The position numbers and the translations under genes are program-made. Below, one piece after another: positions 31,316 to 61,854 of a DNA stretch of 64,000 nucleotides. The notes under the pieces are model-generated. The model searched no databases, was not told the origin of the DNA, and saw nothing but the letters and a program-made list of their open reading frames with translations. The stretch is taken from IMG/VR virus record IMGVR_UViG_3300048591_000147, positions 248,001-312,000 of that record; one strand, given 5' to 3'. Positions within the stretch are counted from its first letter, which is position 1. Each line of letters opens with the position of its first letter.

Positions 31316-31341
31316 CTGACCGATAGGAGTTATCGTCATGA
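31316..31341 (+). repeat. SD-in-loop hairpin leader, copy A
   Basis: CTGACCGATAGGAGTTATCGTCATGA. Confidence 0.8.
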
Positions 31342-32411
31342 GTAAAAATAATCAATACAATTACGCAGTATATATTGGAAGGTTTCAACCCTTTCACTTA
31401 GGTCACCTGAACACCATCAAGTCTGCACTGGAAATAAGTAAAAAGCTTATTGTAGTTCTCGGTTCAGCAAATTCCCCACGTACAATCAAATCACCATTCA
31501 CGGTCAACGAAAGAATCGAAATGATTCAGGCATGTCTGACTGGCGAAGAGTGTGATAAAATCACCTTCACTTCCGTAGAAGATCAGCTTTACAACAATGC
31601 TAATTGGGCTGCTTCGGTTTTAAAGACCGTTGGAGAGATCACAAATGGCGATACCTCAATCACATTACTTGGCGCGAAGAAAGATCAGAAGACAGAATCC
31701 TATATAAATTTCTTTAAGCAATGGGACTATACGGAAACAGCAATTCTGAATTCTGCTGGTGGGAAAAATATCGATGCAACAAAAGTTAGAGAATTGTATT
31801 TCTGCGGACACTTACAGTTTGTCAAATCTGCCGTGCCAGATGGAGTATATAATTTCTTAGAAAAGTTCCAAACTAAAGCAGAGTTCCACCCATTGTGCGC
31901 ACAGTACGATGATGCGGTAAACTACGATAAGAAGTTTGCGTCTTTTCCAAAAGAGTATTCATTGAATTTCGTCACCGTTGATGCGATTGTCGTTCAATCT
32001 GGGCATATTCTATTAATCAAGAGAAAGAAGAATCCGGGTAAAGACCTCTGGGCAGTGGTTGGCGGGCATGTTAATCCAGATGAAACACTGGAAGACGCTA
32101 TGATCAGAGAACTTAGAGAAGAGACTGGAATTAAAGTTCCAGAAAAAGTGTTAAGAGGATCGATTGTAGATCGTAAGATATTTGATCATCCTGATCGTTC
32201 ATTGCGTGGAAGGGTATTCATCAAAAACGGTAGAACTATTACTAGTTCTTATTGTATTAAATTAGATGATAACAATGACCTCCCCCGTGTTAGTGGATTG
32301 GACGATGCCGCTGATGCACATTGGTTCACTTTCTCTGAAGTAAGAAATATGAGAAATAAGTTGTTTGAGGATCACTACGATCAAATCTTGTACTTCCTCA
32401 ATCGGTTGTAA
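31338..32411 (+). CDS. nadM: Bifunctional NMN adenylyltransferase / ADP-ribose pyrophosphatase (NadM-Nudix)
   Basis: GRFQPFHLGH; Nudix box GGHVNPDETLEDAMIRELREETG; DDAADA. Confidence 0.95.
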   Translation: MSKNNQYNYAVYIGRFQPFHLGHLNTIKSALEISKKLIVVLGSANSPRTIKSPFTVNERIEMIQACLTGEECDKITFTSVEDQLYNNANWAASVLKTVGEITNGDTSITLLGAKKDQKTESYINFFKQWDYTETAILNSAGGKNIDATKVRELYFCGHLQFVKSAVPDGVYNFLEKFQTKAEFHPLCAQYDDAVNYDKKFASFPKEYSLNFVTVDAIVVQSGHILLIKRKKNPGKDLWAVVGGHVNPDETLEDAMIRELREETGIKVPEKVLRGSIVDRKIFDHPDRSLRGRVFIKNGRTITSSYCIKLDDNNDLPRVSGLDDAADAHWFTFSEVRNMRNKLFEDHYDQILYFLNRL

Positions 32412-34555: not shown

Positions 34556-34581
34556 CTGACACATAGGAGTTATGGTCATGA
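34556..34581 (+). repeat. SD-in-loop hairpin leader, copy C
   Basis: CTGACACATAGGAGTTATGGTCATGA. Confidence 0.9.
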
Positions 34582-35984
34582 CAAATCTAAGAAACAATCT
34601 TATCCTCAATCTCGTGGATAGTTACAAAACCAGCCACTTTGGCTTTATGGAAACTGGCACCACAGAAATCTTCTCTTACATTGAGAGTCGCGCTGGTAGC
34701 GAGTACAAAGAAACATTATTCTTCGGTCTTCAGTATTTCTTAAAGGAATATATGCAGACTCCAATCACCATGGAAATGGTGGATCAGGCAGAAAAATTCC
34801 TAACAGCACATGGCGAACCGTTCAATAGAACGGGTTGGGAATATATCGTTAACAACCTTAAGGGTAAAATCCCACTTCAAGTCCGCGCAGTGCCAGAAGG
34901 CACCATTGTAACTGAAGGCAACGTATTAGTTACCTTTGTGAACACTGATCCCAATTGTGCGTGGGTTACCGGATATTTCGAAACAGCGTTTCTTCGCGCG
35001 GTGTGGTATCCGTCCACCGTTGCTACTCGTTCGTTTAATATTAAGCGAACCATTAGCAGTTATCTACAGCGCACCGGTTCTATTGAATCTCTACCATTCA
35101 AGATGATTGACTTTGGTGCACGAGGCGTTTCCAGCCTTGAATCAAGCATGCTAGGTGGTGCTGCGCATTTAGTTAATTTCTTAGGTACTGATAATATTTC
35201 GGGCATCATTTGTTCGATGGATTATTATTATTCCAAGGAAGTTACAGGATTTTCTATCCCTGCGAGTGAGCACAGTGTTACAACAGCATGGGGCAAGAAT
35301 CGGGAAGCAGATTTCTTTTCAAATGCCATTGACGTATATGGTGGTCCCGGAAAACTAATCTCATTGGTTGCAGACTCTTATAGTTTGGAAAACGCCATTA
35401 AAATTATTGGTACAACCTTAAAACAGAAGATTATTGATAATGGGTGCACTATCGTTGTTCGCCCTGATTCTGGTGATCCTGCCAGTATGGTGCTGGTTAC
35501 TGTTAGATTGTTGGACCAGTATTTTGGCTGTAATAAGAATGCTGCTGGATATAACGTGCTGCACAACTCGGTCAGAGTTATTCAAGGTGACGGAATCACC
35601 ATTGAATCCATTAAGGAAATTTTAGATCTTCTGGAAAAGAATGGATACAGTGCCGATAACGTTACTTTCGGATGTGGTGGCTATTTGCTCCAGCAATTGA
35701 ATCGTGATACACAACGATTTGCCATGAAAGCATCCTCAGTCGTAGTTGGTGGTGATCGCAGAAATATTTGTAAGACGCCTAAGACTGATATGTCCAAGCA
35801 GTCTAAATCTGGTCGCTTGGCATATGTCAAATTTATCGGTCAAGATATTAAGCGTACCATTACTGTCGAACAGTTTGATCCAACCATCCACGAAGATTTG
35901 ATGGAAACTGTTTACAGAGATGGTGAGATTTTGAAAGTGTATACGTTTGACGAAGTTAGGGCGAATGCAACCAAGAGTTTATAA
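34578..35984 (+). CDS. nadV: Nicotinamide phosphoribosyltransferase (Nampt/NadV)
   Basis: DSYKTSH, IDFGARG, PASEHS, SLVADSY, VVRPDSGD, IQGDG, GCGG. Confidence 0.95.
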   Translation: MTNLRNNLILNLVDSYKTSHFGFMETGTTEIFSYIESRAGSEYKETLFFGLQYFLKEYMQTPITMEMVDQAEKFLTAHGEPFNRTGWEYIVNNLKGKIPLQVRAVPEGTIVTEGNVLVTFVNTDPNCAWVTGYFETAFLRAVWYPSTVATRSFNIKRTISSYLQRTGSIESLPFKMIDFGARGVSSLESSMLGGAAHLVNFLGTDNISGIICSMDYYYSKEVTGFSIPASEHSVTTAWGKNREADFFSNAIDVYGGPGKLISLVADSYSLENAIKIIGTTLKQKIIDNGCTIVVRPDSGDPASMVLVTVRLLDQYFGCNKNAAGYNVLHNSVRVIQGDGITIESIKEILDLLEKNGYSADNVTFGCGGYLLQQLNRDTQRFAMKASSVVVGGDRRNICKTPKTDMSKQSKSGRLAYVKFIGQDIKRTITVEQFDPTIHEDLMETVYRDGEILKVYTFDEVRANATKSL

Positions 35985-47669: not shown

Positions 47670-48599
47670 TTAATATATAATCTTGTCCCATTTTCTATTT
47701 AATATCGGTAGACTATTTTGTATCGTAAAATCCAGTAATCCGCTCAAAATCATTTTAGAACCAATTCGCATTCTAGGAAATTTAATGTGAGATAACAATA
47801 CTGTATTTTTTTTAACTACATTGAAGTAATCGTGTAAAAAATTATTAATATAGTTTAAATTTTCTTCCCATGCGCTGTGAGTCGTTATTGCTATGGAATA
47901 TCCGCTTTTAGTTTTTTGTATACATCCGTCACCATCTATAAATCCTATTATTATAGATAATATTTGTTCTTTTGTAAATTTATATTCTAAAAATTTTGGT
48001 GGGTTATAAGTTTTGTTATAATTTATCATAAATTTATTCATTATTTGTGGTACTATGTTCTCATTTGCCAAACTCACTCTGCAATAAGGTGCGTTATTCT
48101 TATACCCTGTTTTCGTAACACCACTTGTTATTTTTTGAGTTTCTATGAAATTTGCAAATTTTTCTAAATGTGCGTTATCATTAGCACTAAGTGCTAATAT
48201 TAAATAATTTCCACTGAAACACCCGTCAGCCAGTATGAAACCCATCCAATAAAATGCTTCTAAATCATCGTTTAATAACTTTTCAATTTTATTATCATAT
48301 TCAGTTTTTCTTAATCCTAAGTTACCAGCCTTCCAATGAATGCTATCATTACTTCTACATAGTTTTTTGCATAAAAAATTAATATCTTGTGAATCATAAT
48401 TGAGTTTTAAATATTCAATCTCTTCATCTTCCCATTTTTTAGATTTAAATCCTCTTAACAGACCTAATGATACTGCTTTACCTTTAACTGTGTTATAATT
48501 TATTTGCAGCATAGATGCGAGTTCTTTAGTAGTGTATTTTGAAAAATTGTCTATTAAAAAATTAATACTAGATGTAGACCAGCAGTTGGGATTGCGCAT
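47670..48599 (-). mobile_element. Free-standing LAGLIDADG homing endonuclease
   Basis: WMGFILADGCF and IIGFIDGDGCI motifs; AT-rich; AGGAG RBS; TATAAATA at 48636-48643 on the minus strand. Confidence 0.9.
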
Positions 48600-48670: not shown

Positions 48671-49366
48671 ATGAGAATAGTAGCTACTAGTGACACCCAC
48701 TTTCCGGTGAAACCCGGAATGATCCCCTTCGGTGACGTTTTTTTGCATTGCGGTGATCTTATGCAGAATGGGTATCCGTCAGAATGGCCAGATTGTTTAG
48801 ACTGGTTAAATGAATTACCACATAAGGTAAAAATAATTACATTTGGAAATCATGATTTCCATCCATTCCTATATCCCGGACCATCGTTACAAGATTTAAG
48901 AAAGATTGGAGTAACCGTATTAGGATATCCGGGCAATTCACATTATTATGCAATGACATTACCCAATAACATGGTGGTTGCAGCTTGCCCCTATGTTAAT
49001 AATTTACCAAGATGGGCATTTAATGCCAGTCGAGAGCAAGTAGTATATCATTTAGAACAGCTAACACGACTACAGATTGTGGATATAATGATGACTCATA
49101 TGCCAATATACGGAGTATTGGATACAGTGAATAATCGTCATACTGGTTCATTGGAATATCAAAGCTTTCTCATACGCCAACAACCTCCTATAAAATATTG
49201 GTTTTGCGGACATATTCACGAAGGCTACGGACATTACATTGATGATGAGCCATATGAGAAAAAGTTTCATAATCCATTTGGTCGCACTGGTTGCAATATC
49301 TACAATGTCGCCATGTGTAATAGATTACAACAGCATGTTAATAAGCCAGTAGTTATAGACGTTTAA
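48671..49366 (+). CDS. Calcineurin-like metallophosphoesterase
   Basis: SDTH, CGDL, GNHD, MTH, GHIHE. Confidence 0.9.
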   Translation: MRIVATSDTHFPVKPGMIPFGDVFLHCGDLMQNGYPSEWPDCLDWLNELPHKVKIITFGNHDFHPFLYPGPSLQDLRKIGVTVLGYPGNSHYYAMTLPNNMVVAACPYVNNLPRWAFNASREQVVYHLEQLTRLQIVDIMMTHMPIYGVLDTVNNRHTGSLEYQSFLIRQQPPIKYWFCGHIHEGYGHYIDDEPYEKKFHNPFGRTGCNIYNVAMCNRLQQHVNKPVVIDV

Positions 49367-50546: not shown

Positions 50547-51602
50547 ATGAGACTGGAATTACAGGAACAACTAGATTTCTCAGATGTTTTGATTTTACCA
50601 AAACGATCCACACTAAAGTCTAGGAAAGATGTTGATATTACTAGAACGTTTGCATTTAGACATACTGGTAAAACGTGGACCGGGACACCAATTATTGCAT
50701 CAAATATGCTCACTGGCACGTTTGCTATGGCAAACGCGCTATCGAAATACAATATGATGACAGCGCTGCATAAACATTATTCTATCCACGAGTTGATAAA
50801 GTTTTTTAAACACACCGATCAGTCAGTCATTAACAATGTATGGTATTCCATGGGCATAACTGATACAGATTTTCAAAAATTTTCTGATGTATATCAGGTG
50901 TGCGACAATTCAATAGAAAAAATTCTTTGTGAAGTAGCTAATGGCTATACAGATCAGTATGTACAATCGATTAAAAAATTAAGAGATGCATACCCAGATT
51001 TAATCATAATGGCAGGTAATGTCGTTACTGGAGAAATGGCGGCAGAATTGATTCTGGCTGGGGCAGACTGCGTAAGAGCAGGAATTGGCTCGGGACAAAT
51101 GTGTAAAACTCGAACCGTAGCCGGTATAGGTAGGCCACAATTGTCAACAGTAATTGACACCGCTGATGCCGTCCATGGATTGAAAGGTTTGTTATGTAGT
51201 GACGGTGGGTGCACACAGTCAGCAGATGTTAATATAGCATTATGTGCGTCAGCGGATTTCGTTATGCTGGGATCGATGTTGTCAGGTACTGATGAGTGCG
51301 TTGGTGATATTGTAGAAATTGATGGAAAGCAATTCAAGAAGTTCTACGGAATGTCGTCCAATAGCGCCATGGAAGCGTTTTATGGTGGCAGGGCATCGTA
51401 TAGAGCGTCTGAGGGCAGAACGACTATGGTGCCTTACAGAGGTTCTGTAGAGGCTATTGCAGAAGAGTTGTGCGGAGCAATCAGAAGTATGTGCACATAT
51501 GTTGGCGCAGAGAAGTTGAAAGAAGCTACAAAACGCGCTACACTTATCAAAGTCAATAATAGACTTAACACAACTTATGAAAAATATACGATTGGAAACT
51601 GA
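50547..51602 (+). CDS. guaC: GMP reductase
   Basis: LDFSDVLILPKRS, CEVANGY, AGNVVT, GIGSGQMCKTR, SDGG, FYGMSS, SEG. Confidence 0.93.
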   Translation: MRLELQEQLDFSDVLILPKRSTLKSRKDVDITRTFAFRHTGKTWTGTPIIASNMLTGTFAMANALSKYNMMTALHKHYSIHELIKFFKHTDQSVINNVWYSMGITDTDFQKFSDVYQVCDNSIEKILCEVANGYTDQYVQSIKKLRDAYPDLIIMAGNVVTGEMAAELILAGADCVRAGIGSGQMCKTRTVAGIGRPQLSTVIDTADAVHGLKGLLCSDGGCTQSADVNIALCASADFVMLGSMLSGTDECVGDIVEIDGKQFKKFYGMSSNSAMEAFYGGRASYRASEGRTTMVPYRGSVEAIAEELCGAIRSMCTYVGAEKLKEATKRATLIKVNNRLNTTYEKYTIGN

Positions 51603-51899: not shown

Positions 51900-52604
51900 A
51901 TGAAGTACGATGATTTTGGCAACAGAATGAAAAAATATGAAGCGGTAAGCCAATCGGTCTTGACCACAAGAACGCCAGTTATTATGCGTCTTGATGGCTG
52001 CGCATTCCACACATTTACTAAAGGGTTGAACAGACCGTTTGATTCAGTTTTAAGTGATGCTATGGCAGCGACTACCGAACACTTGTGTAGTAAGATCCAA
52101 GGTGCTGTCTTTGGTTATATGCAATCAGATGAAATATCGATCTTGATTCAAGACTGGAAAAATCTGAATACTGATAATTGGTTTGGAAACAATGTCCAGA
52201 AGATGGTGAGTGTTTCCGCGAGCATTGCAACAGCATTCTTTAATAAGACTTATAAGCACCCCTCCAAGGATGCTTTGGCACTATTTGATTCAAGAGTGTT
52301 TAACATTCCCAAAGAGGAAGTCGCTAACTATTTCGTATGGCGCCAGAAAGATTGTACTAGAAATAGTATTAACTCTTTAGGGCAGGCGCACTTTTCAGCT
52401 AAACAGTTACACGGAAAGAATGTTTCACAGGTTCAAGATATGTTGATGGAAACACATAATGTCAACTGGAATGATATCCAAACGCGCTATAAGCGTGGGA
52501 CGTGTGTTGTCAATGGCGTGATTGACTTGGAATGCCCGATCTTTACGCAGGATAGGGGTTACATCGAAAAAACATATGAATTTTCTGAAAGTGTGGTTGT
52601 ATAA
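51900..52604 (+). CDS. thg1: tRNA-His guanylyltransferase (Thg1/TLP)
   Basis: RMKKYE, MRLDGCAFH, QSDEISI, FDSR, YFVWRQKDC.RNS. Confidence 0.93.
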   Translation: MKYDDFGNRMKKYEAVSQSVLTTRTPVIMRLDGCAFHTFTKGLNRPFDSVLSDAMAATTEHLCSKIQGAVFGYMQSDEISILIQDWKNLNTDNWFGNNVQKMVSVSASIATAFFNKTYKHPSKDALALFDSRVFNIPKEEVANYFVWRQKDCTRNSINSLGQAHFSAKQLHGKNVSQVQDMLMETHNVNWNDIQTRYKRGTCVVNGVIDLECPIFTQDRGYIEKTYEFSESVVV

Positions 52605-53010: not shown

Positions 53011-53589
53011 ATGGATTTATATGAATTTCAAAATTTGGCTCTCCGTACAGAGAGTATCATTGGAGATGTAGTGGTAAATAAAGAAGAGCTTCTATGTTTA
53101 ATAGAAGCATATGCGATTTTAGGAGACATGCTTGACTGTTACAAAAAGAAGATTTTCTATAAGAAAGATAAGAAGTATGATGAGACATTTTTATCATCGC
53201 TACGTAAGATCCAAAATCTAACATTCAACATTAGTTATAGACATGATAATGATGTGGAATTGGTAGAACATTTGTCTGGTGAGTCTAGTAGAATCTTACA
53301 CGGCATGTTAGGTATATGTACCGAGAGTGCCGAACTCGCACAAATTCTTCATAAGTTTGTAGATGATGGTGGCTTAGATACAATCAATCTAATGGAAGAG
53401 ATGGCAGACGGTGCTGGAGGCACCAACTCATGGTATGGAGCAATTCTGTGTGACGTATTAAACATCGACCCTTATGATCCCATGGACAAAGTCATTAGAA
53501 AACTAAAGGCTAGATTTCCAGATAAGTATTGCGATGAAAAGGCAGATAATAGAGATATTGCTGCCGAAAGAGCAGAGTTAGAATCGTGA
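53011..53589 (+). CDS. mazG: MazG-like NTP pyrophosphohydrolase
   Basis: LHGMLGICTESAEL, EEMAD, KLKARFP. Confidence 0.8.
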   Translation: MDLYEFQNLALRTESIIGDVVVNKEELLCLIEAYAILGDMLDCYKKKIFYKKDKKYDETFLSSLRKIQNLTFNISYRHDNDVELVEHLSGESSRILHGMLGICTESAELAQILHKFVDDGGLDTINLMEEMADGAGGTNSWYGAILCDVLNIDPYDPMDKVIRKLKARFPDKYCDEKADNRDIAAERAELES

Positions 53590-54146
53590 GAAAGATAGCT
53601 TGTCTGGATTTGGACGACACAGTTGCGAATCTGCGCGACAGTTTAATGCATGCCCTCAATGGATATACTGGAAAGGATATCCATTGGAATGATTGGGATT
53701 GTTATGATCTGAATAAAATTTATGATCTTGACACCCCATCGGTCGTAGACTGTATCCAAAGCAATAAGCTATTACAAAATGTAGAACTCATGGACGGATC
53801 GCTGGATTTCCTGAACTTACTCAAAAGTAAAGGATATTTAATACATTTTGTAACTGCGCGAGCATGGCATGAAAAGGGCTATGAGTTGACCAAGGAATGG
53901 TTGCAGAGTAGAAATGTCCCATACGATGCATTGAATGTGACCAGCCATCAAGTGGCCAAAATAGATGCCGTCAGATGCTATTACAATAAGGTGGATTTGG
54001 CGATTGATGATTGCTATAGTCATATAGCTGATTACAAGAAAAGTGGCATAGTCACCCATGCGGTGCTATTCCACCATCCTTGGAATAGAAATCAACCATA
54101 TGACAAGATCATAAATCATATCTCAGAAGCTGAATTGTACATTTAA
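53586..54146 (+). CDS. 5'(3')-deoxyribonucleotidase (HAD)
   Basis: DLDDTVA, VTAR, AIDD, HPWN. Confidence 0.85.
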   Translation: MRKIACLDLDDTVANLRDSLMHALNGYTGKDIHWNDWDCYDLNKIYDLDTPSVVDCIQSNKLLQNVELMDGSLDFLNLLKSKGYLIHFVTARAWHEKGYELTKEWLQSRNVPYDALNVTSHQVAKIDAVRCYYNKVDLAIDDCYSHIADYKKSGIVTHAVLFHHPWNRNQPYDKIINHISEAELYI

Positions 54147-54769: not shown

Positions 54770-55561
54770 TTATGCTGCTTTCAGCGAAACGACATTAGCG
54801 TCATCGTCTTCTACGGCACAAATCCACTTCTTAACAAATCCACTTCTAACAATATCATCTCTAGTGAATATAATTTCGTCGAACACATTGGATCGTCTTG
54901 CAACATTCAGGAACTTCGGCATTCCGGTAAGTTCATTCTTCTTGTTGAATAGATCATTCTGTGCAACGTCACCACAAGCGATAATTCTGGAGTTTTCACC
55001 TGTTCTGGTTACCACTGAATTTATTTCATGGAAATTCATATTTTGAATTTCATCAATGAAAATAATAGCGTTGTCCCAAGTTAATCCTCTCACGAATGAT
55101 GTTGGAATGAATTCAATACAGCCAAGTGACTTCATTGTATCGTATGCGTCATACTTACCCATTAGATGATTTACTATATCTTTATATGGTAGCTCATAAA
55201 CCGCCAACTTCTCTTCGATTGAGCCGGGAAGGTGCCCAATTTCACGATTTTGCACTGCGCTTCTTACGATGATTATTTTAAACACGCCATTTTGCTTATT
55301 AAGCATTTCGGCTAATGCTAGATACAATGCCACGAAGCTTTTCCCAGTTCCAGCAGAGCCGTGGGCAATGATGTTATTACCTTGGAAAAATGATTCGAAC
55401 ATGGTTTCTTGTATGTGATTTAACGGTTTGACTGTTTTCAAGTCGTGCGGGGAGAAATGCTTTTTTCTTGGTCCTTCCATAGTTGCTTTAGCATTCGTGC
55501 TAATCATAGTTGATAGTTCTTCAATTTGTTTATCTTTTTTTGTGCGACTTTTTTGCGCCAT
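54770..55561 (-). CDS. phoH: PhoH family ATPase
   Basis: GSAGTGKS, IVRS, SFVRGLTW, IDEIQN, CGDVAQND, IVRSGFVK. Confidence 0.95.
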   Translation of the reverse strand: MAQKSRTKKDKQIEELSTMISTNAKATMEGPRKKHFSPHDLKTVKPLNHIQETMFESFFQGNNIIAHGSAGTGKSFVALYLALAEMLNKQNGVFKIIIVRSAVQNREIGHLPGSIEEKLAVYELPYKDIVNHLMGKYDAYDTMKSLGCIEFIPTSFVRGLTWDNAIIFIDEIQNMNFHEINSVVTRTGENSRIIACGDVAQNDLFNKKNELTGMPKFLNVARRSNVFDEIIFTRDDIVRSGFVKKWICAVEDDDANVVSLKAA

Positions 55562-55889: not shown

Positions 55890-56148
55890 AAATATTCTAA
55901 ATATTTTCAAGAGTCTATCGAAGAGACTAGGAGAAGATTTGGTTTATTCCATTGCATATGATAATGGAAAATTATTAATATGCATTTCAGTACATAAGTC
56001 AAAGCGACTTACATATGGCACTGATTCACAAACAAGAACGGTTGAAATAAATGGCACGGCATTAGACCGTCAAATAAATGACGTATTGGCAGAAGTTGTA
56101 GATTATTTTAAAACTCACCTAAAGGAAAGGGAAAATGAAATTGAATGA
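55873..56148 (+). CDS. Hypothetical protein
   Basis: 91-aa ORF in operon context. Confidence 0.55.
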   Translation: MKTRTKNILNIFKSLSKRLGEDLVYSIAYDNGKLLICISVHKSKRLTYGTDSQTRTVEINGTALDRQINDVLAEVVDYFKTHLKERENEIE

Positions 56149-56644
56149 GATCACACAACCGGCAAATCCTCCCAAGGGAACCTTTGTTGGTGTAAAATTA
56201 GACGCAGAATCTAAGCAAAAAATTCTGGATTTAATAGGTAAGTTAAAATTGGAGGAACCAATTCCTGAAGACAAGTTACACTCCACGCTAGTGTACTCCG
56301 ACAAGAAATCTTTGGATGGGTTTAAATCTAATACTAGTTTCGGTGAGAGTGGCTTTCCAAAGGTTAAGCCGGTCAACTTTAATGTCTTTCCAAATTCACA
56401 AAACCCCGGTACTGGATGTCTGGTCATGGAGTTGGATTCGGATTACTTACATACTAGACATGATGAAATTGTTTCGAAATATGATGTTCAAGAAAAATTT
56501 CCGACGTATCGCCCACATATAACACTTTCATACAATTATGCTGGTGAACCACCAGACAGTAAATATTTACAAGACCTTGGTGAATTGAATATTGAATCAG
56601 AGTATGATGAGCCCATAAACGATAACTTTGCTAAATCTTTATGA
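56135..56644 (+). CDS. acb1: Anti-CBASS nuclease Acb1-like 2H phosphodiesterase (T4 57B family)
   Basis: PIPEDKLHSTLVYS, LVMELDSDYL..RH, YRPHITLSYN and EYDEPI follow the T4 Acb1 pattern. Confidence 0.88.
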   Translation: MKLNEITQPANPPKGTFVGVKLDAESKQKILDLIGKLKLEEPIPEDKLHSTLVYSDKKSLDGFKSNTSFGESGFPKVKPVNFNVFPNSQNPGTGCLVMELDSDYLHTRHDEIVSKYDVQEKFPTYRPHITLSYNYAGEPPDSKYLQDLGELNIESEYDEPINDNFAKSL

Positions 56645-57381
56645 AATCAATTTTTATGTCGGACTTGCACCTTGGCAACCCTCATTGCCAAGCCGATAAG
56701 CTTTACAATTTTTTAAAGTCGTTAGAGATGGAAGATGGTAATTATTGTATAGAGAATCTGTTCTTGGTCGGTGACATCATCGATATGACCGGGTTCAACA
56801 ATAAGGTATTCTGGTCCCATCATAGAAAAGTAATAAAGAAATTTCTTAGAATGGCTGATCGTGGTGTGAAGCTCTATTATGTTATTGGTAATCACGACTA
56901 CCATTTAGAAAATGAAATACTGAATAGTTATGAGGACGTACAGTCATTCAATAATATTACATTTTGTAGAGAGTACGTCTACAATAATATTTTACTGATC
57001 CATGGTGATCAGTTTGACGGAGTAGTTAAGGCATACCCGATTCTTTATACTATTGGTGATTTTGGGTATCATTTATTGATACATATCAATCACTTACAGA
57101 ATAAAGTAAGGAGATTATTCGGTATGAAGGAATGGAGCTTCTCACTCTGGGTAAAGACTAAAGTTAAGAAGGCTATCCAGTTTATTAATCACTTTGAAGA
57201 AGCGGTGTGTAGGTACGCAAAAGAAAAAAACGTCACAACCGTTATAGCTGGTCACATTCATAAAGCCGAAGATACGATGTTTGATGGTATCAGGTATCTT
57301 AACACTGGCACCTATGTAGAATTCTGTTCTTATGTGGTAGAGTATAAGGATGGAACTTTGGAGCTAAAATTTTATGAGTAA
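56641..57381 (+). CDS. plcP: PlcP-type phospholipase C (LpxH-like metallophosphoesterase)
   Basis: SDLHLG, LVGDIID, GNHD, HGDQFD, WSFSLWVKTKVKKAIQFI, GHIH, YLNTG. Confidence 0.8.
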   Translation: MKSIFMSDLHLGNPHCQADKLYNFLKSLEMEDGNYCIENLFLVGDIIDMTGFNNKVFWSHHRKVIKKFLRMADRGVKLYYVIGNHDYHLENEILNSYEDVQSFNNITFCREYVYNNILLIHGDQFDGVVKAYPILYTIGDFGYHLLIHINHLQNKVRRLFGMKEWSFSLWVKTKVKKAIQFINHFEEAVCRYAKEKNVTTVIAGHIHKAEDTMFDGIRYLNTGTYVEFCSYVVEYKDGTLELKFYE

Positions 57382-58417
57382 CGAAAAAGTATTAATAATT
57401 TGTGAAGCTAGACCACCACAGGTCAATGGCGTTGTTACAACCTTTAGAAATGTTCAAAGAGAATTAGAAGAGATGGGGTATACAGTAGATATAATTGGTC
57501 CTGATTGGGAGCAATTTAAAACGATGTCCCTTCCCTTTTATAAAGAGATTCAGATTGTATTGAACCCTTGGAAGATAAGAAACCTTATTAACTCTGGATA
57601 TTATGATTTTATTCATATCGCTACTGAAGGGCCATTGGGATATTATGCGGCCAAATATTGTGAAAAGAAGAAGATAAAATTCACAACGTCATATCACACC
57701 AAGATGCCAGAGTATGTGAATGCTAAGTTTCCGTTGATCCCCACAAACTTAGTATACAGATATATGAGAAGACTGCACAAGCGCTCTAGTAACATTCTAG
57801 TTACTAGCGAATCTATGCGCAATGAATTAATTGCTAAGGGCTTCAATAATAGTTTTATAGTATGGGCCAGAGGCGTAGATGAAACTGTTTTTAATTCTTC
57901 CACCAAACAGAAATTGGCTAAACCATACTTATTATATGTGGGTAGAGTTTCTGTAGAAAAGAACATCGATGCGTTCATGAAGTTGGACTTTCCAGACCAT
58001 ATTAAAGTTATAGTTGGTGATGGTCCAGATTTGGCACGATTGAAGAGTGAGAATGAACACAGACAAGATATACTTTTTGTTGGCGTCAAGTTCGGTAAAG
58101 ACCTAGCAGCGTGGTATGCCGGTGCCGATTGTTTCGTTTTCCCTTCAAAAACAGATACTTACGGTATTGTCATGATCGAATCACTGTGTTGTGGCACCCC
58201 CGTAGCCGGATATGATGTTACTGGGCCAGTAGATATCATTACTCGTCCAGAATTTGGAGAAGCGTATCCACATTTACAGACAGCAGTAGAAATAGTATTA
58301 GATGAATTCAAACATGACCCTGATAGAAGACAGCAATGTGAGGATTTAAGTAGACAGATGTTTACGTGGTATAATTGCGCCAGCATCTTTGCAAAATCAT
58401 TGGTCGCTAAGTCATGA
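57374..58417 (+). CDS. agt: GT4 glycosyltransferase, Agt-like (diacylglycerol glycosyltransferase)
   Basis: PQVNGVV, HIATEGPLG, FTTSYHTKMPEYV, YVGRVSVEKN, VFPSKTDTYG.V.IES. Confidence 0.8.
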   Translation: MSNEKVLIICEARPPQVNGVVTTFRNVQRELEEMGYTVDIIGPDWEQFKTMSLPFYKEIQIVLNPWKIRNLINSGYYDFIHIATEGPLGYYAAKYCEKKKIKFTTSYHTKMPEYVNAKFPLIPTNLVYRYMRRLHKRSSNILVTSESMRNELIAKGFNNSFIVWARGVDETVFNSSTKQKLAKPYLLYVGRVSVEKNIDAFMKLDFPDHIKVIVGDGPDLARLKSENEHRQDILFVGVKFGKDLAAWYAGADCFVFPSKTDTYGIVMIESLCCGTPVAGYDVTGPVDIITRPEFGEAYPHLQTAVEIVLDEFKHDPDRRQQCEDLSRQMFTWYNCASIFAKSLVAKS

Positions 58418-59049
58418 TCATATTACCAGTAATACATTATTCTACATTATCAGTAGCATTAGAAAATGCTGAAATAGCTTTTCAGAATGGGTGCGATGGC
58501 GTTTTCGTCATCAATATGGACTATACACCAGAAACTGATCTGGAAATTCCAGCAGTGTGCGCCCATATCAAGAAGCTGTTTCCTAATAAGAAAGTTGGTG
58601 CTAATTTCCTATATGCTGATTTCATAACAATGTTTGTAAATGCTGTTGACAGCATAGATATGATTTGGACAGACGACTTAATTCCCGAAGAGCATGATGA
58701 GGTCATCCGGCTACAGGGATTTGTCAAAGACATAGATATCTTCGAATCATTCGCGTTCAAATATAAAAAAGCCGATCCAGATTTCGTTAACACCGGAAAC
58801 AATATCTTAGCTAAGGGTAGGATTCCAACTACATCAGGAAGTGGTACTGGTCATGCAGCACCATTAGAAAAACTCATTCAATTATCTGAGCTTCCCAGAC
58901 TAGCATTAGCCAGTGGACTGACACCGGATAATGTATCCATGTTTAAGCCATATATTACACATGCGCTAGTCGCTACTGGAATCTCTGATTCATTCTATAC
59001 ATTCGATCCAACCAAGGTTAAAGACTTCGTACAAGCCGTTAGAGGTTGA
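58414..59049 (+). CDS. BtpA/SgcQ-like TIM-barrel protein
   Basis: LPVIH, GCDGVFVIN, TTSGSGTG, ALASGLTPDNV, LVATGIS. Confidence 0.65.
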   Translation: MIILPVIHYSTLSVALENAEIAFQNGCDGVFVINMDYTPETDLEIPAVCAHIKKLFPNKKVGANFLYADFITMFVNAVDSIDMIWTDDLIPEEHDEVIRLQGFVKDIDIFESFAFKYKKADPDFVNTGNNILAKGRIPTTSGSGTGHAAPLEKLIQLSELPRLALASGLTPDNVSMFKPYITHALVATGISDSFYTFDPTKVKDFVQAVRG

Positions 59050-59097: not shown

Positions 59098-60213
59098 ATG
59101 GACAGAGTTACAGAGTTAGTTGAGAAGTTAAAGCACTTTGACGAAGCGTATTTCAATGCTTCCATAACCGATGAAGTGCTTGATGACAATGAATACGATA
59201 ATCTTAGGAACAAGCTAAAACTATTGGACCCATCTAACCAGTATTTTACTGGTATTGGGTCTGATGTTCGCGGTGGTAAGGTTCCCCTACCATTCCCGAT
59301 GGGATCATTAAATCAAGTATATGATGATAATGACATCCTGAATTGGATAACGAAGTATGGCATTTCGAGTGCTGTCATATCTGATAAATTGGATGGATGT
59401 TCTTGTGAGCTAATCTATAGAGATGGCCAGTTTGCACAGGCGTTCTCTAGGGGTAATGGCGTCGAAGGCGCTGACATAACAAGAAACATTGCGCTAATCC
59501 CTAATGTGCCTAAAACTATATCTGCTGGTTATTTGTTCCCAGATGACATCGTAGTCAGAGCGGAAGTGATCATCAAGAATTTAGTATTTGATGTGAAATA
59601 TTCAAAAGAATTTAAGAATAGCCGCAATATGGTGGCTGGTATTCTTAATAGAAAACTTCCAACAGAAGACGTACTGGGTGACTTCGAAGTTATTGTTTAT
59701 GAAATAATGGACGGTGTAACCAATCTTACGAAGGCCAAAGAATTGGAGCTTCTTAAGCAATATGGTTTTACCGTTGTGGAATATCAGACTCATCCAATTG
59801 ACATTCTGAATGATAATGATCTGGGTAAAATGGTCTTTGATCGAAAGGCAAAGTCTGCATACCTGTTAGACGGGTTGGTAATAACTACAGACACGTATAA
59901 AAACATTTCTGCACAGTCTAACTCGTCATCGTTAAATCCAGAACATTCAGTAAAGTATAAGAATCTTTCTAGAGATGCATACCGTGAAGTGTCGGTAGTT
60001 GACGTCCTATGGGAATTGTCAATGAATGGACTATGGAAGCCTCGCGTACAGATTGTCCCAACGGAACTAGATGGTGTCACTATAACCTACGTCACTGGAC
60101 ATAACGGGCGTTTTATATACGATAACAAGATAATGCCGGGGACTGTAGTTAAAATCGTCAGAGCAGGATCAGTTATACCTCAAATCGTCGGGGTGATATC
60201 CGTTCCTACGTAA
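59098..60213 (+). CDS. ligA: NAD-dependent DNA ligase, N-terminal part (Ia + adenylation + OB)
   Basis: YFNA...YD, KLDG, SRGNG, DGLVI, VKYK, VRAGSVIPQIV followed by a stop. Confidence 0.93.
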   Translation: MDRVTELVEKLKHFDEAYFNASITDEVLDDNEYDNLRNKLKLLDPSNQYFTGIGSDVRGGKVPLPFPMGSLNQVYDDNDILNWITKYGISSAVISDKLDGCSCELIYRDGQFAQAFSRGNGVEGADITRNIALIPNVPKTISAGYLFPDDIVVRAEVIIKNLVFDVKYSKEFKNSRNMVAGILNRKLPTEDVLGDFEVIVYEIMDGVTNLTKAKELELLKQYGFTVVEYQTHPIDILNDNDLGKMVFDRKAKSAYLLDGLVITTDTYKNISAQSNSSSLNPEHSVKYKNLSRDAYREVSVVDVLWELSMNGLWKPRVQIVPTELDGVTITYVTGHNGRFIYDNKIMPGTVVKIVRAGSVIPQIVGVISVPT

Positions 60214-60963
60214 AAAATCATAAATTATACTTCTCAAGGAATCAAAAGAACGATGCTTGTGATTAATTCGTAATAATGGGATGTTGTTATTGTAAGCATA
60301 CATATATTTTTTGTAGTCATATTCGGCATTTTTTGTAAATTTTTCCAATGCTTCCTTGTCCGTAGTTATACCACATCTGAACATTCTCTTTGGATCAGTG
60401 TGTTGTACCCCATCATATTCTATCAATAAGTTAAAATCGTTTAGATAGAAATCGAAGCGTAGGTCACAATAATCACCAACTAAACCGTTGAATTTCTTAT
60501 CAAATGTATGTTTTATTCCATAGACATTTGTTAATATATCTGATATTTTTCTCTCAGCACTTGACATTTTTTTAGAACATAGAGGACAACCTTGACCAAA
60601 TAAATGTTTCCCCGGAGCTATCTTAAAATCAGCATGAATAGGACACATGACGATTATCTTGGTGGTGGAATTTGTATATTCTACTTTATCGTAATTATAT
60701 CTACCACCATGAATGAAATTGAATTGTGATTTCAATGTATTGATATCTTTTCTCTTTATGTTCCCTATTTTATCAGACTTACATTTAGCACAGCCGGATT
60801 TGTCTAAGTGTTGATTAGGAACTTGTTCAAAGTCTCCATGAATTGGACAAGTTATAGTAACTTTCGATTTTACTGTAGTATACGTGGTTTTATCATATGT
60901 ATATTTGTTATTATGTATCTTATTAGCTTTTTCAATAAATTGTTCTGTTGTGACTCTTTTCAT
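60169..60963 (-). mobile_element. Homing endonuclease (Vsr/EDxHD-like nuclease with Zn repeats) inserted antisense in ligA
   Basis: Two CPIH...GC..C repeats; RFDFYL...IEYDGVQH. Start at 60963 after an AGAGGT RBS; TATAAATA at 61018-61025 on the minus strand. Confidence 0.88.
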
Positions 60964-60978
60964 GTACGGAATTACCTC

Positions 60979-61006
60979 TTGATTCTTTTTGTTTCCGGTG
61001 TATAAT
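60979..61006 (+). promoter_or_regulatory. Sigma70-like promoter for the ligase C-terminal gene
   Basis: TTGATT-16-TATAAT; AAGGTG RBS at 61025-61030 before ATG 61042. Confidence 0.65.
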
Positions 61007-61041
61007 ACCATTCATTGTATTTATAAGGTGTGTAGATTTTT

Positions 61042-61854
61042 ATGGATAAATTTGAAAAATATTTTAACGATTCAATGAATAAACTAATGGGCGAGGGTAA
61101 TTGGTGTTGGAGTCCATCTGGTGTAGAAGTTATGATCCCAGATCATAATAACAATCCGAAGGTAAAATTTAAACAAGCCTTAGCGTTCTTTGATACCCTG
61201 AACGTTGATTTGTTGAAAGAGGCTTCCCTGAAGTCCGTGTTTGACAAGTACAATCTATACAATCTTTCATATGATAACATCATTGTATTCTTGGTTGAGC
61301 TTCTTGAACTGGAGTGGGTCAGGGTAATTGGTTCGAATGGTAAAAAGATTTTCAACAGCTTACATAATAAGCTACAGAAATTACCTCCTGAAGAGTTTTT
61401 AGGCGCCCTCAGATATTTTGGCGCAGGGTTCGGTGTTAGAAAATCCAAAATGCTGTTAAATCAATGTGATGGTATACATGCTGTCAAACATTTATCAGAG
61501 AACGATATTGTTAATATGGTTGGATTTGACACAACCACTGCAAAAATGATACTTTCAGGTATTGATGAAGCACTACTTTTATTAGAGCGCTTGAAGGATT
61601 ACATCACATTAGTTAAGAAGGTGGCAGTGTCCGCTGATCTTTCACACCTTAATGTGGTGCTGACGGGTTTCAGAGATTCTACATTACAGAATTTTATTGA
61701 AATGAATGGCGGTAAGGTTGGTTCGGGTGTAAGCAAAAAGACAACACACCTAATCTGCTCGTCAGTGGATTCCGGCTCTTCAAAATATAAGAAGGCACAG
61801 GAACTGGGTGTTACTGTAATAACACTTGAGGATTTTAAAAATCAATACCTATAA
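61042..61854 (+). CDS. ligA: NAD-dependent DNA ligase, C-terminal part (HhH + BRCT)
   Basis: FGAGFGVRK and VGFDTTTA HhH motifs; VVLTGFRD...GGKVGSGVSKKTTHLI...KYKKAQELGV BRCT. Confidence 0.9.
   Translation: MDKFEKYFNDSMNKLMGEGNWCWSPSGVEVMIPDHNNNPKVKFKQALAFFDTLNVDLLKEASLKSVFDKYNLYNLSYDNIIVFLVELLELEWVRVIGSNGKKIFNSLHNKLQKLPPEEFLGALRYFGAGFGVRKSKMLLNQCDGIHAVKHLSENDIVNMVGFDTTTAKMILSGIDEALLLLERLKDYITLVKKVAVSADLSHLNVVLTGFRDSTLQNFIEMNGGKVGSGVSKKTTHLICSSVDSGSSKYKKAQELGVTVITLEDFKNQYL

What the first reader, a model, noticed from the sequence alone, without database searches (positions are those of the whole stretch)
56641..58417. Phage-encoded PlcP + Agt phosphate-starvation lipid-remodelling pair
The first gene has GNHD (not LpxH GNRD) and the PlcP-type YWSFS.W.K..VK.A..FI helix. 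The overlapping second gene has Agt-type PQVNGVV / HIATEGPLG / YHT.FPEY motifs. Known: in proteobacteria PlcP cleaves phospholipids to DAG plus phospho-headgroup, and Agt converts DAG to glucosyl/glucuronosyl-DAG under P limitation. phoH lies about 1.1 kb away. Inference: the phage mines host membrane phosphorus for DNA synthesis while keeping the bilayer intact. It may also alter receptors or membrane-acting defence effectors. I am not aware of a characterised phage version.
Basis: partly seen in the sequence, partly recalled or inferred. Interest (0 to 1): 0.85.

Follow-up and report, generated by a model that had tools for sequence, protein, structure and literature searches.

The report
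Phage-borne PlcP–Agt lipid-remodelling gene pair
A 315-kb phage from freshwater or wastewater carries the two bacterial genes that swap membrane phospholipids for phosphorus-free glycolipids, so the phage probably strips phosphorus from its host's membrane during infection; I found no published description of a virus doing this.

Summary
Window 56641-57381 (246 aa) and 57374-58417 (347 aa) are intact + strand genes that overlap by 8 nt. They lie on a 314,956-bp IMG/VR phage contig that has a large terminase, a UvsX-like recombinase and a helicase.

Gene 1 is a PlcP-type metallophosphoesterase, not LpxH.
- It has GNHD and all the metal-ligand motifs.
- It is 39-42% identical to operon-defined PlcPs and 21% to E. 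coli LpxH.
- It scores 49/38 bits on NCBI's LpxH models (cut-offs 134/190). SAR11 PlcP scores 55/44 and E. coli LpxH 364/389.

Gene 2 belongs to the Agt/GTcp clade of GT4.
- It is 42-46% identical to SAR11, Roseibium and Mesorhizobium Agt.
- It keeps the diagnostic His-Asp dyad, GRVSVEKN and FPSKTDTYG, and 12 of 14 residues shown by mutagenesis to be essential in GTcp.

Distribution:
- In 58 of the 80 closest cellular homologues, this same GT4 lies directly downstream of plcP.
- Six related large phage contigs (173-340 kb) keep both genes, in one of them unlinked.
- At least 26 further IMG/VR loci carry the pair.
- No GenBank phage isolate has both genes.

The enzymology and the purpose (phosphorus mining versus membrane or receptor remodelling) are inferred, not shown. 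The host is unknown. I found no paper on a phage-encoded PlcP.

The parts
56641..57381 (+). PlcP-type metallophosphoesterase (phospholipase C of the lipid-renovation pathway), 246 aa
   Evidence: Pfam Metallophos 4e-12. LpxH equivalog models give only 48.7/38.3 bits against cut-offs 134/190; SAR11 operon PlcPs score 55/44 and E. coli LpxH 364/389. 39-42% identity to operon-defined PlcPs and 21% to E. coli LpxH. D8, H10, D45, N84, H85, H121, H205 and H207 are conserved, with GNHD and the WSFS..K.K.K lid helix. In the tree it falls in a 43-row large-phage-contig/metagenome clade, support 99. The AF2 model (pLDDT 87) shows a metallophosphoesterase core plus a helical lid; the best PDB match is LpxH at TM 0.56 and 18-20% identity.
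57374..58417 (+). Agt/GTcp-clade GT4 glycosyltransferase (diacylglycerol glucosyl/glucuronosyl transferase), 347 aa
   Evidence: Pfam Glyco_transf_4 and Glycos_transf_1. 42-46% identity to SAR11, Roseibium and Mesorhizobium Agt. Has the H108/D261 dyad, GRVSVEKN, FPSKTDTYG, R166 and W332; 12 of the 14 GTcp residues essential by mutagenesis are identical (PMC8231724). It lies inside the Agt clade, grouped with L168 and L003 at support 100. The AF2 model (pLDDT 96) has a GT-B fold.
57360..57381 (+). Junction of the two genes: GGAG Shine-Dalgarno-like site, then an ATG that overlaps the PlcP stop (8-nt overlap)
   Evidence: Sequence read directly. It suggests translational coupling.
56135..56644 (+). 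Context gene: Acb1 (anti-CBASS 2H phosphodiesterase). Its stop overlaps the PlcP start (ATGA). Same apparent transcription unit, not part of the lipid pathway.
   Evidence: PF23474 1.4e-26 and phrog_755 1.6e-30. Junction read. Acb1 is kept near the pair in L003, L169, L170 and L171.
58414..59049 (+). Context gene: BtpA-family-like TIM-barrel protein, 211 aa, ATGA-coupled to the Agt stop. Not conserved with the pair.
   Evidence: No Pfam, NCBIfam or PHROG hit. Atlas feature score 0.95 and TM 0.93 to clusters that partly carry PF03437 and are mostly Uroviricota. Absent in L003, L169, L170 and L171; only a remnant in L168.
54770..55561 (-). Context gene: phoH, divergently oriented, 1.08 kb upstream
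   Evidence: PF02562 6.4e-42. Conserved in the same region of the related large phage contigs.

Best explanation
The two genes are a phage-borne copy of the bacterial PlcP-Agt membrane lipid-renovation pathway.

Shown here: gene 1 is a PlcP-family Mn-type metallophosphoesterase with an LpxH-like helical lipid lid. Gene 2 is an Agt/GTcp-clade GT4 with the His-Asp catalytic dyad. The two are translationally coupled, under purifying selection, and co-retained across a lineage of large phage contigs.

Inferred from characterised relatives: during infection PlcP cleaves host glycerophospholipids (PG, PE, PC) into diacylglycerol plus a phospho-headgroup. Agt then uses host UDP-glucose or UDP-glucuronate to convert the diacylglycerol into MGlc-DAG or GlcA-DAG. 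The bilayer survives while its phosphorus moves into the soluble pool.

Because the genes are on the phage, this happens independently of the host Pho regulon, and even in hosts that lack the pathway.

Most likely purpose (inference): to supply phosphorus for nucleotide and DNA synthesis of a 315-kb genome. The pair sits among nucleotide-metabolism genes.

My confidence by layer: family membership about 0.9; the enzymatic outcome about 0.75; phosphorus supply as the selected benefit about 0.5.
For: PlcP rather than LpxH:
- NCBIfam LpxH scores, with controls.
- Identities and motifs.
- 53-sequence family alignment in which the metal ligands are invariant.
- Tree.

Agt:
- The GTcp residues shown by mutagenesis to be essential are conserved, including Asp in place of the usual GT4 Glu (PMC8231724).
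- Tree.

Operon context:
- 58 of the 80 closest cellular plcP loci have this GT4 directly downstream, including SAR11. This is the type-2 plcP-agt arrangement, whose SAR11 genes were validated experimentally (PMC4796936).
- PstS lies beside plcP in 12 cellular loci, in phage Mosig and in 2 IMG/VR loci.

Retention in phages:
- L003, L004, L168, L169 and L171 keep both genes close together; L170 keeps both about 7 kb apart.
- pN/pS is 0.09 (PlcP) and 0.23 (Agt) with saturated synonymous sites.
- 26 of 80 IMG/VR plcP loci have agt adjacent, and several of these have phage-type neighbours.
- Neighbouring genes are DHFR, IMPDH/GMP reductase, an NT5C-like HAD protein, NAMPT and ligase.

GT4-PlcP fusion proteins exist.
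Against: - No biochemical, expression or lipidomic data. The wastewater 'cDNA' runs that hold the sequence are probably DNA.
- The host is unknown.
- The phage and its closest relative occur in wastewater, activated sludge and freshwater. Phosphorus is not always scarce there.
- No dedicated phosphatase for the released phospho-headgroups was identified.
- phoH adjacency carries little weight.
- I could not fetch any experimentally characterised PlcP sequence (SMc00171, MED193_17359, PB7211_983, PA3219). The comparison rests on operon-defined orthologues, including SAR11 single-cell genomes.
- The GT4 parts of the fusion proteins are only 20-29% identical to this Agt.
- T162 of GTcp, a docked DAG contact, is Ala here.
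Confidence: 0.62

Rival explanations
1. The same enzymes and the same chemistry, but the selected benefit is remodelling of the cell envelope rather than phosphorus supply. Replacing anionic phospholipids with glycolipids would change receptor presentation or membrane properties. That could exclude superinfecting phages, or blunt membrane-acting abortive-infection effectors such as CBASS phospholipase or pore effectors. On this reading the pair acts together with the co-transcribed anti-CBASS gene Acb1.
For: Acb1 is ATGA-coupled directly upstream and stays near the pair in L003, L169, L170 and L171. In bacteria, PlcP-Agt glycolipids change sensitivity to a membrane-active antibiotic (PMC8528852), and membrane lipid composition changes phage attachment (PMC9938194). 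The phage occurs in habitats that are not clearly phosphorus-poor.
Against: In L004 the pair has no Acb1 nearby, and in L170 Agt is separated from Acb1 and PlcP. The other phage lineages carry the pair next to ribonucleotide reductase or other nucleotide genes. plcP in Mosig lies beside pstS. No known defence system is shown to be countered by glycolipid substitution.
Confidence: 0.2
2. The database annotation is right: gene 1 is LpxH (UDP-2,3-diacylglucosamine diphosphatase of lipid A synthesis) and gene 2 is an LPS or cell-wall glycosyltransferase. Together they would modify LPS.
For: JGI and NCBI name the homologues LpxH and 'glycosyltransferase involved in cell wall biosynthesis'. The closest solved structures to gene 1 are LpxH.
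Against: Gene 1 scores 48.7/38.3 bits on the LpxH equivalog models against cut-offs of 134/190, whereas E. coli LpxH scores 364/389. It is 21% identical to E. coli LpxH and has GNHD, not GNRD. LpxH sits on a 4.35 changes-per-site branch in the tree. Gene 2 carries the Agt-specific Asp dyad and motifs. The best NCBIfam hits for gene 2 are lipid glycosyltransferases, not LPS enzymes.
Confidence: 0.03
3. PlcP acts mainly as a membrane-degrading or lysis-assisting phospholipase, or as a source of DAG or carbon. Agt would be a passenger from the captured operon.
For: Several phages carry plcP without agt: Mosig, L006 and 40 of 80 IMG/VR loci.
Against: Agt is under purifying selection and keeps its catalytic residues. 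It is retained across the lineage of large phage contigs, even where it is unlinked from plcP. The pair lies in an early/metabolic region, not a lysis cassette.
Confidence: 0.07
4. Artefact: the pair is host DNA mis-assembled or mis-binned into a viral contig.
For: IMG/VR contains some proviral or contaminating sequence. The closest named homologues are bacterial.
Against: The genes overlap phage genes on both sides. They lie on a 315-kb contig with TerL. GC content is flat at about 0.36-0.40 across the region. The closest relatives are on six other 173-340-kb contigs with phage-type neighbours, and no cellular homologue exceeds about 46% identity.
Confidence: 0.02

Closest known systems
Bacterial PlcP-Agt lipid-renovation operon (SAR11 HTCC7211 PB7211_983/PB7211_960 = GTcp; P. 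aeruginosa PA3219/PA3218; Methylosinus trichosporium OB3b; A. tumefaciens Agt atu2297)
   Same: The same two protein families in the same gene order (plcP then agt). The metal-ligand set, the Agt His-Asp dyad and the UDP-sugar motifs are all conserved. Identity to operon-defined orthologues is 39-46% (PMC4796936, PMC8231724, PMC8528852, PMC9239053).
   Different: It is encoded by a lytic-type large phage, not a cell. No Pho box or PhoB context can be assigned. The phage PlcPs lack the N- and C-terminal extensions of many cellular PlcPs and carry a 7-8-residue insert after the FLKS helix. The genes overlap and are coupled to an anti-CBASS gene. Activity is untested.
LpxH (UDP-2,3-diacylglucosamine diphosphatase)
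   Same: A calcineurin-like metallophosphoesterase core with a helical lipid-binding lid inserted at the same place. LpxH is the closest solved structure (TM about 0.56).
   Different: 21% identity. GNHD instead of GNRD. A different lid sequence. It fails the NCBIfam equivalog cut-offs by a wide margin.
Pelagibacter phage Mosig EXVC030M gene Mosig_00120 (annotated 'putative UDP-2,3-diacylglucosamine hydrolase')
   Same: A PlcP-family gene in a cultured phage: 38% identity over the full length, and divergently adjacent to a phage pstS.
   Different: No Agt within 6 kb either side of it, or anywhere in the record at E<=1e-5. It is a T4-like 141-kb pelagimyophage. It falls in a different PlcP clade. 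Its papers do not discuss the gene.
Phage phosphorus-stress auxiliary metabolic genes (pstS, phoA, phoH in cyanophages and pelagiphages; my own knowledge)
   Same: Host-derived genes carried by phages and thought to relieve phosphorus limitation of phage DNA synthesis.
   Different: Those genes act on uptake or scavenging of external phosphorus. This pair would mobilise an internal structural phosphorus pool and replace it.
Other DAG glycosyltransferases of GT4 (Acholeplasma Mgs-type MGlc-DAG synthase, IagA/BgsA, GlcN-PG synthase)
   Same: They are the best-scoring named NCBIfam models: 65, 50 and 42 bits. All are GT-B lipid glycosyltransferases.
   Different: All scores are far below the cut-offs of 400-480 bits. 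SAR11 Agt gives the same weak profile. The window protein is therefore an Agt, not a member of those families.

Membership tests
PlcP (lipid-renovation phospholipase C, SMc00171 / MED193_17359 / PB7211_983 / PA3219 type) | Calcineurin-like metallophosphoesterase with the complete metal-ligand motif set (DxH, GD, GNH[D/E], H, GHxH) | tested here: met
   PF00149 4e-12. D8, H10, G44-D45, G83-N84-H85, H121, G204-H205 and H207 are invariant across 53 family members. The AF2 model has pLDDT 87.
PlcP (lipid-renovation phospholipase C, SMc00171 / MED193_17359 / PB7211_983 / PA3219 type) | Groups with operon-defined PlcPs and apart from LpxH | tested here: met
   39-42% identity to SAR11, Mesorhizobium, Methylobacterium and Sphingomonas PlcPs, against 21% to E. 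coli LpxH. Same LpxH-model scores as SAR11 PlcP. Tree. Only one LpxH sequence was available as outgroup.
PlcP (lipid-renovation phospholipase C, SMc00171 / MED193_17359 / PB7211_983 / PA3219 type) | Family-specific lid helix (WS[LF]S..K.K.K) and the [YV].N.G.W.E C-terminal motif, both absent from LpxH | tested here: met
   S166, K172, K176, N221 and G223 are invariant; W165, Y219 and E227 are nearly invariant. The alignment with LpxH shows different sequence at these places.
PlcP (lipid-renovation phospholipase C, SMc00171 / MED193_17359 / PB7211_983 / PA3219 type) | Genomic linkage to a non-phosphorus-lipid synthesis gene (agt, btaAB or another DAG glycosyltransferase) | tested here: met
   An Agt-clade GT4 overlaps its 3' end. 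The same arrangement occurs in 58 of 80 cellular loci.
PlcP (lipid-renovation phospholipase C, SMc00171 / MED193_17359 / PB7211_983 / PA3219 type) | Direct comparison with an experimentally characterised PlcP sequence | not tested
   None of the characterised sequences could be fetched with the tools. The key biochemical papers (PMC6052262, PMC2806695) are not held. SAR11 single-cell-genome orthologues served as proxies.
PlcP (lipid-renovation phospholipase C, SMc00171 / MED193_17359 / PB7211_983 / PA3219 type) | Mn2+-dependent phospholipase C activity that releases diacylglycerol from PG, PE or PC | not testable with these tools
   Needs an enzyme assay or lipidomics.
PlcP (lipid-renovation phospholipase C, SMc00171 / MED193_17359 / PB7211_983 / PA3219 type) | Induction by phosphorus starvation through a Pho box | not testable with these tools
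   This is a phage gene in an unknown host. The sigma-70-type promoter-like sites in the region are no more frequent than in shuffles. No expression data.
Agt / GTcp clade of GT4 (DAG glucosyl/glucuronosyl transferase) | GT-B fold, GT4 family | tested here: met
   PF13439 and PF00534. AF2 pLDDT 96; TM 0.7-0.8 to GT4 structures.
Agt / GTcp clade of GT4 (DAG glucosyl/glucuronosyl transferase) | Catalytic dyad His104-Asp256, with Asp replacing the usual GT4 Glu (the D256E mutant loses more than 90% of activity) | tested here: met
   H108 and D261 in the window protein. The numbering was validated on 334-aa SAR11 Agts, of which P0241 matches all 14 published positions and P0255 13 of 14 (PMC8231724).
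Agt / GTcp clade of GT4 (DAG glucosyl/glucuronosyl transferase) | UDP-sugar motifs GRVAxEKN and FPSxTDTFG, and the Gly-rich motif | tested here: met
   GRVSVEKN, FPSKTDTYG and PQVNGVV. SAR11 P0241 also has GRVS; Y for F is conservative.
Agt / GTcp clade of GT4 (DAG glucosyl/glucuronosyl transferase) | DAG-contact residues His104, Thr162, Arg163, Trp320 | tested here: inconclusive
   H108, R166 and W332 are kept. Thr162 is Ala165 here and S, G or T in other clade members. The paper calls only H104, R163 and W320 strictly conserved (PMC8231724).
Agt / GTcp clade of GT4 (DAG glucosyl/glucuronosyl transferase) | High identity within the clade and under 25% to other GT4 enzymes | tested here: met
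   42-46% to SAR11, Roseibium and Mesorhizobium Agt. 12-21% to solved GT4 structures. It lies inside the Agt clade, with the 26-30% GT4s as outgroup.
Agt / GTcp clade of GT4 (DAG glucosyl/glucuronosyl transferase) | Synthesis of MGlc-DAG and/or GlcA-DAG from DAG and a UDP-sugar | not testable with these tools
   Needs expression with lipidomics. Sugar specificity differs among characterised members (PMC8528852, PMC8231724), so it cannot be read from the sequence.
LpxH | Score above the NCBIfam equivalog cut-offs (NF003743 134 bits; TIGR01854 190 bits) | tested here: not met
   48.7 and 38.3 bits. The E. coli LpxH control scores 364 and 389.
LpxH | GNRD motif in place of the canonical GNH[D/E] | tested here: not met
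   GNHD in the window protein, GNRD in E. coli LpxH.

The most novel reading that the evidence does not exclude
The Acb1-PlcP-Agt string is a single counter-defence or host-takeover unit. On this reading the phage rewrites the host inner membrane from phospholipid to glycolipid. That would make the membrane a poor substrate or target for membrane-attacking abortive-infection effectors, or would shut the door on competing phages. Phosphorus release would be a by-product. This would be a new anti-defence principle: changing the effector's target rather than the signal or the sensor.
Probability: 0.12. Interest if true: 0.88.

Novelty: new member of a known kind. Interest (0 to 1): 0.66.

Why it matters
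Phage genes for phosphorus stress known so far act on uptake or scavenging (pstS, phoA) or have unknown function (phoH). A phage-borne PlcP-Agt pair would be the first viral route for mobilising an internal structural phosphorus pool, the membrane itself, while keeping the cell intact until lysis.

A rough budget from my own textbook figures: an E. coli-sized cell holds about 2x10^7 phospholipid molecules, and a 315-kb dsDNA genome needs about 6.3x10^5 phosphates. The membrane pool would therefore cover a few tens of such genomes.

The family is not rare in viruses.
- At least 571 IMG/VR stretches encode a PlcP relative (a lower bound).
- At least three viral clades carry the pair.
- Databases call these genes 'LpxH' and 'cell-wall glycosyltransferase'. 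Virome surveys that report 'lpxH' auxiliary genes in surface oligotrophic water (PMC10653327) may be counting lipid remodelling as LPS synthesis.

If the activity is real, viral infection changes the lipid phosphorus quota and the glycolipid signature of bacterioplankton and of sludge communities. It also gives hosts that lack the pathway a transient remodelling ability. HTCC1062, the host of Mosig, lacks plcP according to PMC4796936.

Tried and rejected
- Megablast of the locus against 50,697 GenBank phage records: no match.
- tblastn of gene 1 against the same records: only 5 records at E<=1e-5 (Mosig, S-SRM01 twice, one faecal contig, one 595-kb uncultured phage). At E<=1 only SbcD/gp47-type nucleases are added. 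The cultured relatives by terminase (XacN1, Xoo-sp13, CM1/RAS14, PA5oct group) lack the gene.
- tblastn of gene 2: no phage record above 30% identity.
- Single-protein scans of viral and metagenome contigs each found just one locus: the window's own contig and L168.
- A paper on Xanthomonas phage X1 lists 'lpxH' and 'mgs' among predicted auxiliary genes. I could not link these to this family. No Xanthomonas phage appears among the matches to gene 1, even at E<=1, or to gene 2. X1 itself postdates the collection.
- I tried to anchor on the characterised GTcp accession through cluster look-up. The SAR11 clusters did not list it, so I validated the numbering by residue match instead.
- The papers with PlcP biochemistry (PMC6052262, PMC2806695) are not held.
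- Read laying on four wastewater 'cDNA' runs: fragmentary 2-8x contigs that are probably DNA, so no evidence of expression. One 1,839-nt 'skip' rests on a 24-nt side, and one depth spike rests on a roughly 30-nt match; I disregarded both.
- Promoter and terminator scans: no more sites than in shuffles.
- dN/dS proper could not be computed for three of four pairs because synonymous sites are saturated. I report pN/pS.
- GT4-PlcP fusion proteins looked like Rosetta-stone support. Their GT4 halves are only 20-29% identical to this Agt, and one has Glu where Agt has Asp, so the support is only generic.
- The HAD/NT5C-like gene at 53586-54146 could be the missing headgroup phosphatase. Its hits are weak and below cut-off, so I make no claim.
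Full report
**What is there.** The window has two intact + strand ORFs at the stated coordinates: 56641-57381 (246 aa) and 57374-58417 (347 aa). They overlap by 8 nt, and a GGAG lies 10 nt upstream of the second ATG. The first gene's ATG overlaps the stop of the upstream gene (ATGA). The second gene's stop overlaps the ATG of the downstream gene (ATGA). Four genes are therefore strung together as one apparent translationally coupled unit. phoH lies 1,080 bp away on the other strand.

**It is a phage.**
- The window is part of IMG/VR UViG_3300048591_000147, 314,956 bp. Window coordinate plus 248,000 gives the contig coordinate.
- The window encodes a large terminase, a UvsX-like recombinase, a helicase, NAMPT and an NMNAT-NUDIX protein.
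- The terminase is closest to those of Xanthomonas phage XacN1 and Xoo-sp13 (43%), Stenotrophomonas phages CM1 and RAS14 (42%) and the PA5oct group (37%).
- GC content is about 0.36-0.40 across the region, with no step at the pair.
- Near-identical sequence occurs in wastewater runs.
- The closest relative, L168, occurs in freshwater, activated-sludge and wastewater runs.
- The host is unknown.

**Gene 1 is PlcP-type, not LpxH.**
- Pfam sees only the generic calcineurin-like phosphoesterase domain.
- On NCBI's two LpxH equivalog models the protein scores 48.7 and 38.3 bits, against cut-offs of 134 and 190.
- As controls, E. coli LpxH scores 364 and 389. Two SAR11 proteins that sit in plcP-agt operons score 55/44 and 51/42. 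Phage Mosig's homologue scores 60/50.
- A local alignment gives 39-42% identity to operon-defined PlcPs of SAR11, Mesorhizobium, Methylobacterium and Sphingomonas, and 21% to E. coli LpxH.
- All metal-ligand motifs are kept: D8-x-H10, GD45, GN84H85D, H121, GH205xH207. These are invariant in a 53-member family alignment.
- The protein has GNHD where LpxH has GNRD.
- It shares with PlcPs, and not with LpxH, the GDIID, HGDxFDG, WS(L/F)S..K.K.K and YLN.G.W.E motifs.
- The AF2 model (pLDDT 87) is a metallophosphoesterase core with a three-helix lid at residues 127-195. LpxH is the nearest solved structure, at TM about 0.56 and 18-20% identity. No PlcP structure exists in the PDB copy.
- In a 218-row tree, E. 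coli LpxH sits on a branch of 4.35 changes per site. The window protein falls in a 43-row clade (support 99) made only of proteins from large phage contigs and metagenomes.
- A profile search finds 1,934 50%-identity clusters at E<=1e-30, so the family is large.

**Gene 2 is Agt/GTcp-type.**
- It is a GT4 enzyme. Its best named NCBIfam hits are lipid glycosyltransferases: GlcN-PG synthase, Mgs-type MGlc-DAG synthase and IagA/BgsA. All are far below their cut-offs, and SAR11 and Mesorhizobium Agt give the same weak profile.
- The paper on the SAR11 enzyme GTcp defines the clade experimentally (PMC8231724). The defining features are: a catalytic dyad His104-Asp256, in which Asp replaces the usual GT4 Glu and cannot be swapped for Glu; the motifs GRVAxEKN and FPSxTDTFG; nine further residues whose Ala mutants are inactive; and the DAG contacts H104, T162, R163 and W320.
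- I checked the numbering on 334-aa SAR11 Agts. One matches all 14 positions.
- The window protein keeps 12 of the 14 exactly: G19, G86, G89, H108, R166, R191, K196, D261, T262, G264, E269 and W332. It has Y for F258 and A for T162, a position that also varies in other clade members.
- It is 42-46% identical to SAR11, Roseibium and Mesorhizobium Agt and 12-21% identical to solved GT4 structures.
- In a 205-row tree it lies inside the Agt clade, with L168 and L003 as nearest relatives (support 100). GT4s of 26-30% identity form the outgroup.
- The AF2 model has pLDDT 96 and a GT-B fold.

**The pairing is the bacterial operon.**
- Among the 80 closest cellular homologues of gene 1 found in 185,579 species genomes, 58 have a GT4 that is at least 35% identical to gene 2 within 600 bp downstream on the same strand.
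- These include nine Pelagibacteraceae genomes, plus Methylobacterium, Mesorhizobium, Roseibium, Sphingomonas and Caulobacterales.
- This is the type-2 plcP-agt arrangement of Sebastian et al. They showed by mutagenesis, complementation and heterologous expression that SAR11 PlcP and Agt carry out phospholipid-to-glycolipid remodelling (PMC4796936). The same pathway was validated in P. aeruginosa and Methylosinus.
- PstS lies within 5 kb of plcP in 12 of the cellular loci.

**Distribution in phages.**
- Six other contigs of 173-340 kb (L003, L004, L168, L169, L170, L171) carry both genes among phage-type neighbours such as DHFR, thymidylate synthase, ClpP, ligase, phoH and Acb1.
- L171 and L003 share the window's order Acb1-PlcP-Agt-ligase. 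L169 has ligase-x-PlcP-68 aa-Agt. L170 keeps both genes about 7 kb apart. L004 has the pair in a different neighbourhood.
- L006 (270 kb) has PlcP alone.
- Against L168, nonsynonymous differences are 0.076 per site (PlcP) and 0.158 per site (Agt), while synonymous sites are saturated at 0.85 and 0.68. That indicates strong purifying selection.
Of the best 80, 26 have Agt adjacent, 3 have it elsewhere in the locus and 11 are truncated.
- The viral sequences form their own clades rather than scattering among cellular ones. One clade contains phage Mosig and one is sister to SAR11.
- Ten flanking genes sampled from pair-bearing IMG/VR loci include ribonucleotide reductase directly upstream of plcP, homing endonucleases, RNA ligase and phage-only PHROG families.
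- Among 50,697 GenBank phage records, only Mosig, S-SRM01, one faecal contig and one 595-kb uncultured phage have a gene-1 relative. None has an Agt-clade GT4.
- Mosig's gene lies divergently beside pstS. Its host HTCC1062 lacks plcP according to PMC4796936.

**How it most likely works.** Shown: family membership, intact catalytic residues, coupling and selection. Inferred from characterised relatives: PlcP releases DAG and a phospho-headgroup from host PG, PE or PC. Agt converts the DAG into MGlc-DAG and/or GlcA-DAG using host UDP-sugars. The bilayer persists while its phosphorus becomes soluble. Encoding the pair on the phage frees it from PhoB control and supplies it to hosts that lack it. 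The neighbouring genes are mostly for nucleotide metabolism, and plcP is linked to pstS elsewhere. I therefore rank phosphorus supply for phage DNA synthesis first, at about 0.5 for the purpose. Envelope remodelling for exclusion or counter-defence comes second, because Acb1 is co-transcribed and the habitats are not clearly phosphorus-poor. The LpxH/LPS reading and an assembly artefact are contradicted by the tests above.

**Limits.**
- No expression evidence: the runs laid on the locus are probably DNA.
- The host is unknown.
- No characterised PlcP sequence could be fetched.
- There is only one LpxH outgroup.
- The trees were built with FastTree.
- The viral nature of the IMG/VR loci was checked for ten flanking genes only.

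**Novelty.** Searches for PlcP with phage, viral or auxiliary-gene terms, for pelagimyophage lipid genes, and for viral 'lpxH' found no description of a phage-encoded PlcP or PlcP-Agt pair. The pelagimyophage survey reads phage glycosyltransferases as O-antigen modifiers. A Mediterranean virome study lists 'lpxH' among surface-water LPS genes. The proteins are new members of known families. The new element is their deployment by phages, which appears widespread and mis-annotated.

Noticed in passing
window 59098-61854: The NAD-dependent DNA ligase is split. The adenylation and OB domains (59098-60213, +) and the BRCT part (61042-61854, +) are separated by a 280-aa minus-strand ORF (60169-61011) with a DUF723/zinc-ribbon hit, which looks like a homing-endonuclease insertion. 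In relatives L003, L169, L170 and L171 the ligase is one gene of 623-633 aa.
   Followed up: partly
window 58414-59049: A 211-aa BtpA-family-like TIM-barrel protein is ATGA-coupled to the Agt stop. It has no Pfam, NCBIfam or PHROG hit, but its atlas clusters are mostly from Uroviricota, and some members are fused to a phosphoribosyltransferase. It is absent from L003, L169, L170 and L171, and only a 25-residue remnant remains in L168.
   Followed up: partly
window 56135-56644: An Acb1 anti-CBASS 2H phosphodiesterase (PF23474 1.4e-26) lies directly upstream, with its stop overlapping the PlcP start. The phoH-Acb1-ligase neighbourhood is conserved across the lineage of large phage contigs.
   Followed up: partly
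window 31338-32411 and 34572-35984: An NAD salvage pair: an NMNAT-NUDIX fusion and nicotinamide phosphoribosyltransferase (PHROG 7e-75 and 1e-149).
   Followed up: no
window 48671-49366; 47670-48599 (-); 51900-52604; 50547-51602: A second, unrelated calcineurin-like phosphoesterase (231 aa); a LAGLIDADG homing endonuclease on the minus strand; a Thg1-like tRNA-His guanylyltransferase; and an IMPDH/GMP-reductase-family enzyme.
   Followed up: no
L170:7393-9023: In this 340-kb relative, Agt is unlinked from PlcP (about 7 kb away). It overlaps the end of a HAD-family hydrolase (PF00702/PF13419), a candidate phosphatase for the released phospho-headgroups.
   Followed up: no
P0378, P0395, P0409, P0416 (metagenome proteins, 564-663 aa): Natural fusion proteins with an N-terminal GT4 and a C-terminal PlcP domain. 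The GT4 halves are only 20-29% identical to the window Agt, so they belong to another lipid-GT subgroup.
   Followed up: partly
L001 (Pelagibacter phage Mosig, record 93031-94866): The only cultured phage with a clear PlcP homologue has it divergently beside a phage pstS. The gene is annotated as UDP-2,3-diacylglucosamine hydrolase. Its host HTCC1062 is reported to lack plcP.
   Followed up: partly
literature (PMC10653327) and database names: PlcP-family proteins are named LpxH throughout JGI and NCBI annotation. The 'lpxH' auxiliary genes reported from surface oligotrophic viromes may therefore be PlcP.
   Followed up: no
L168:7500-10000: The closest relative's locus is held by a wastewater metatranscriptome run (X10, 20% of sampled words). 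This is a lead for transcription that I could not follow because the read-laying run was already used.
   Followed up: no
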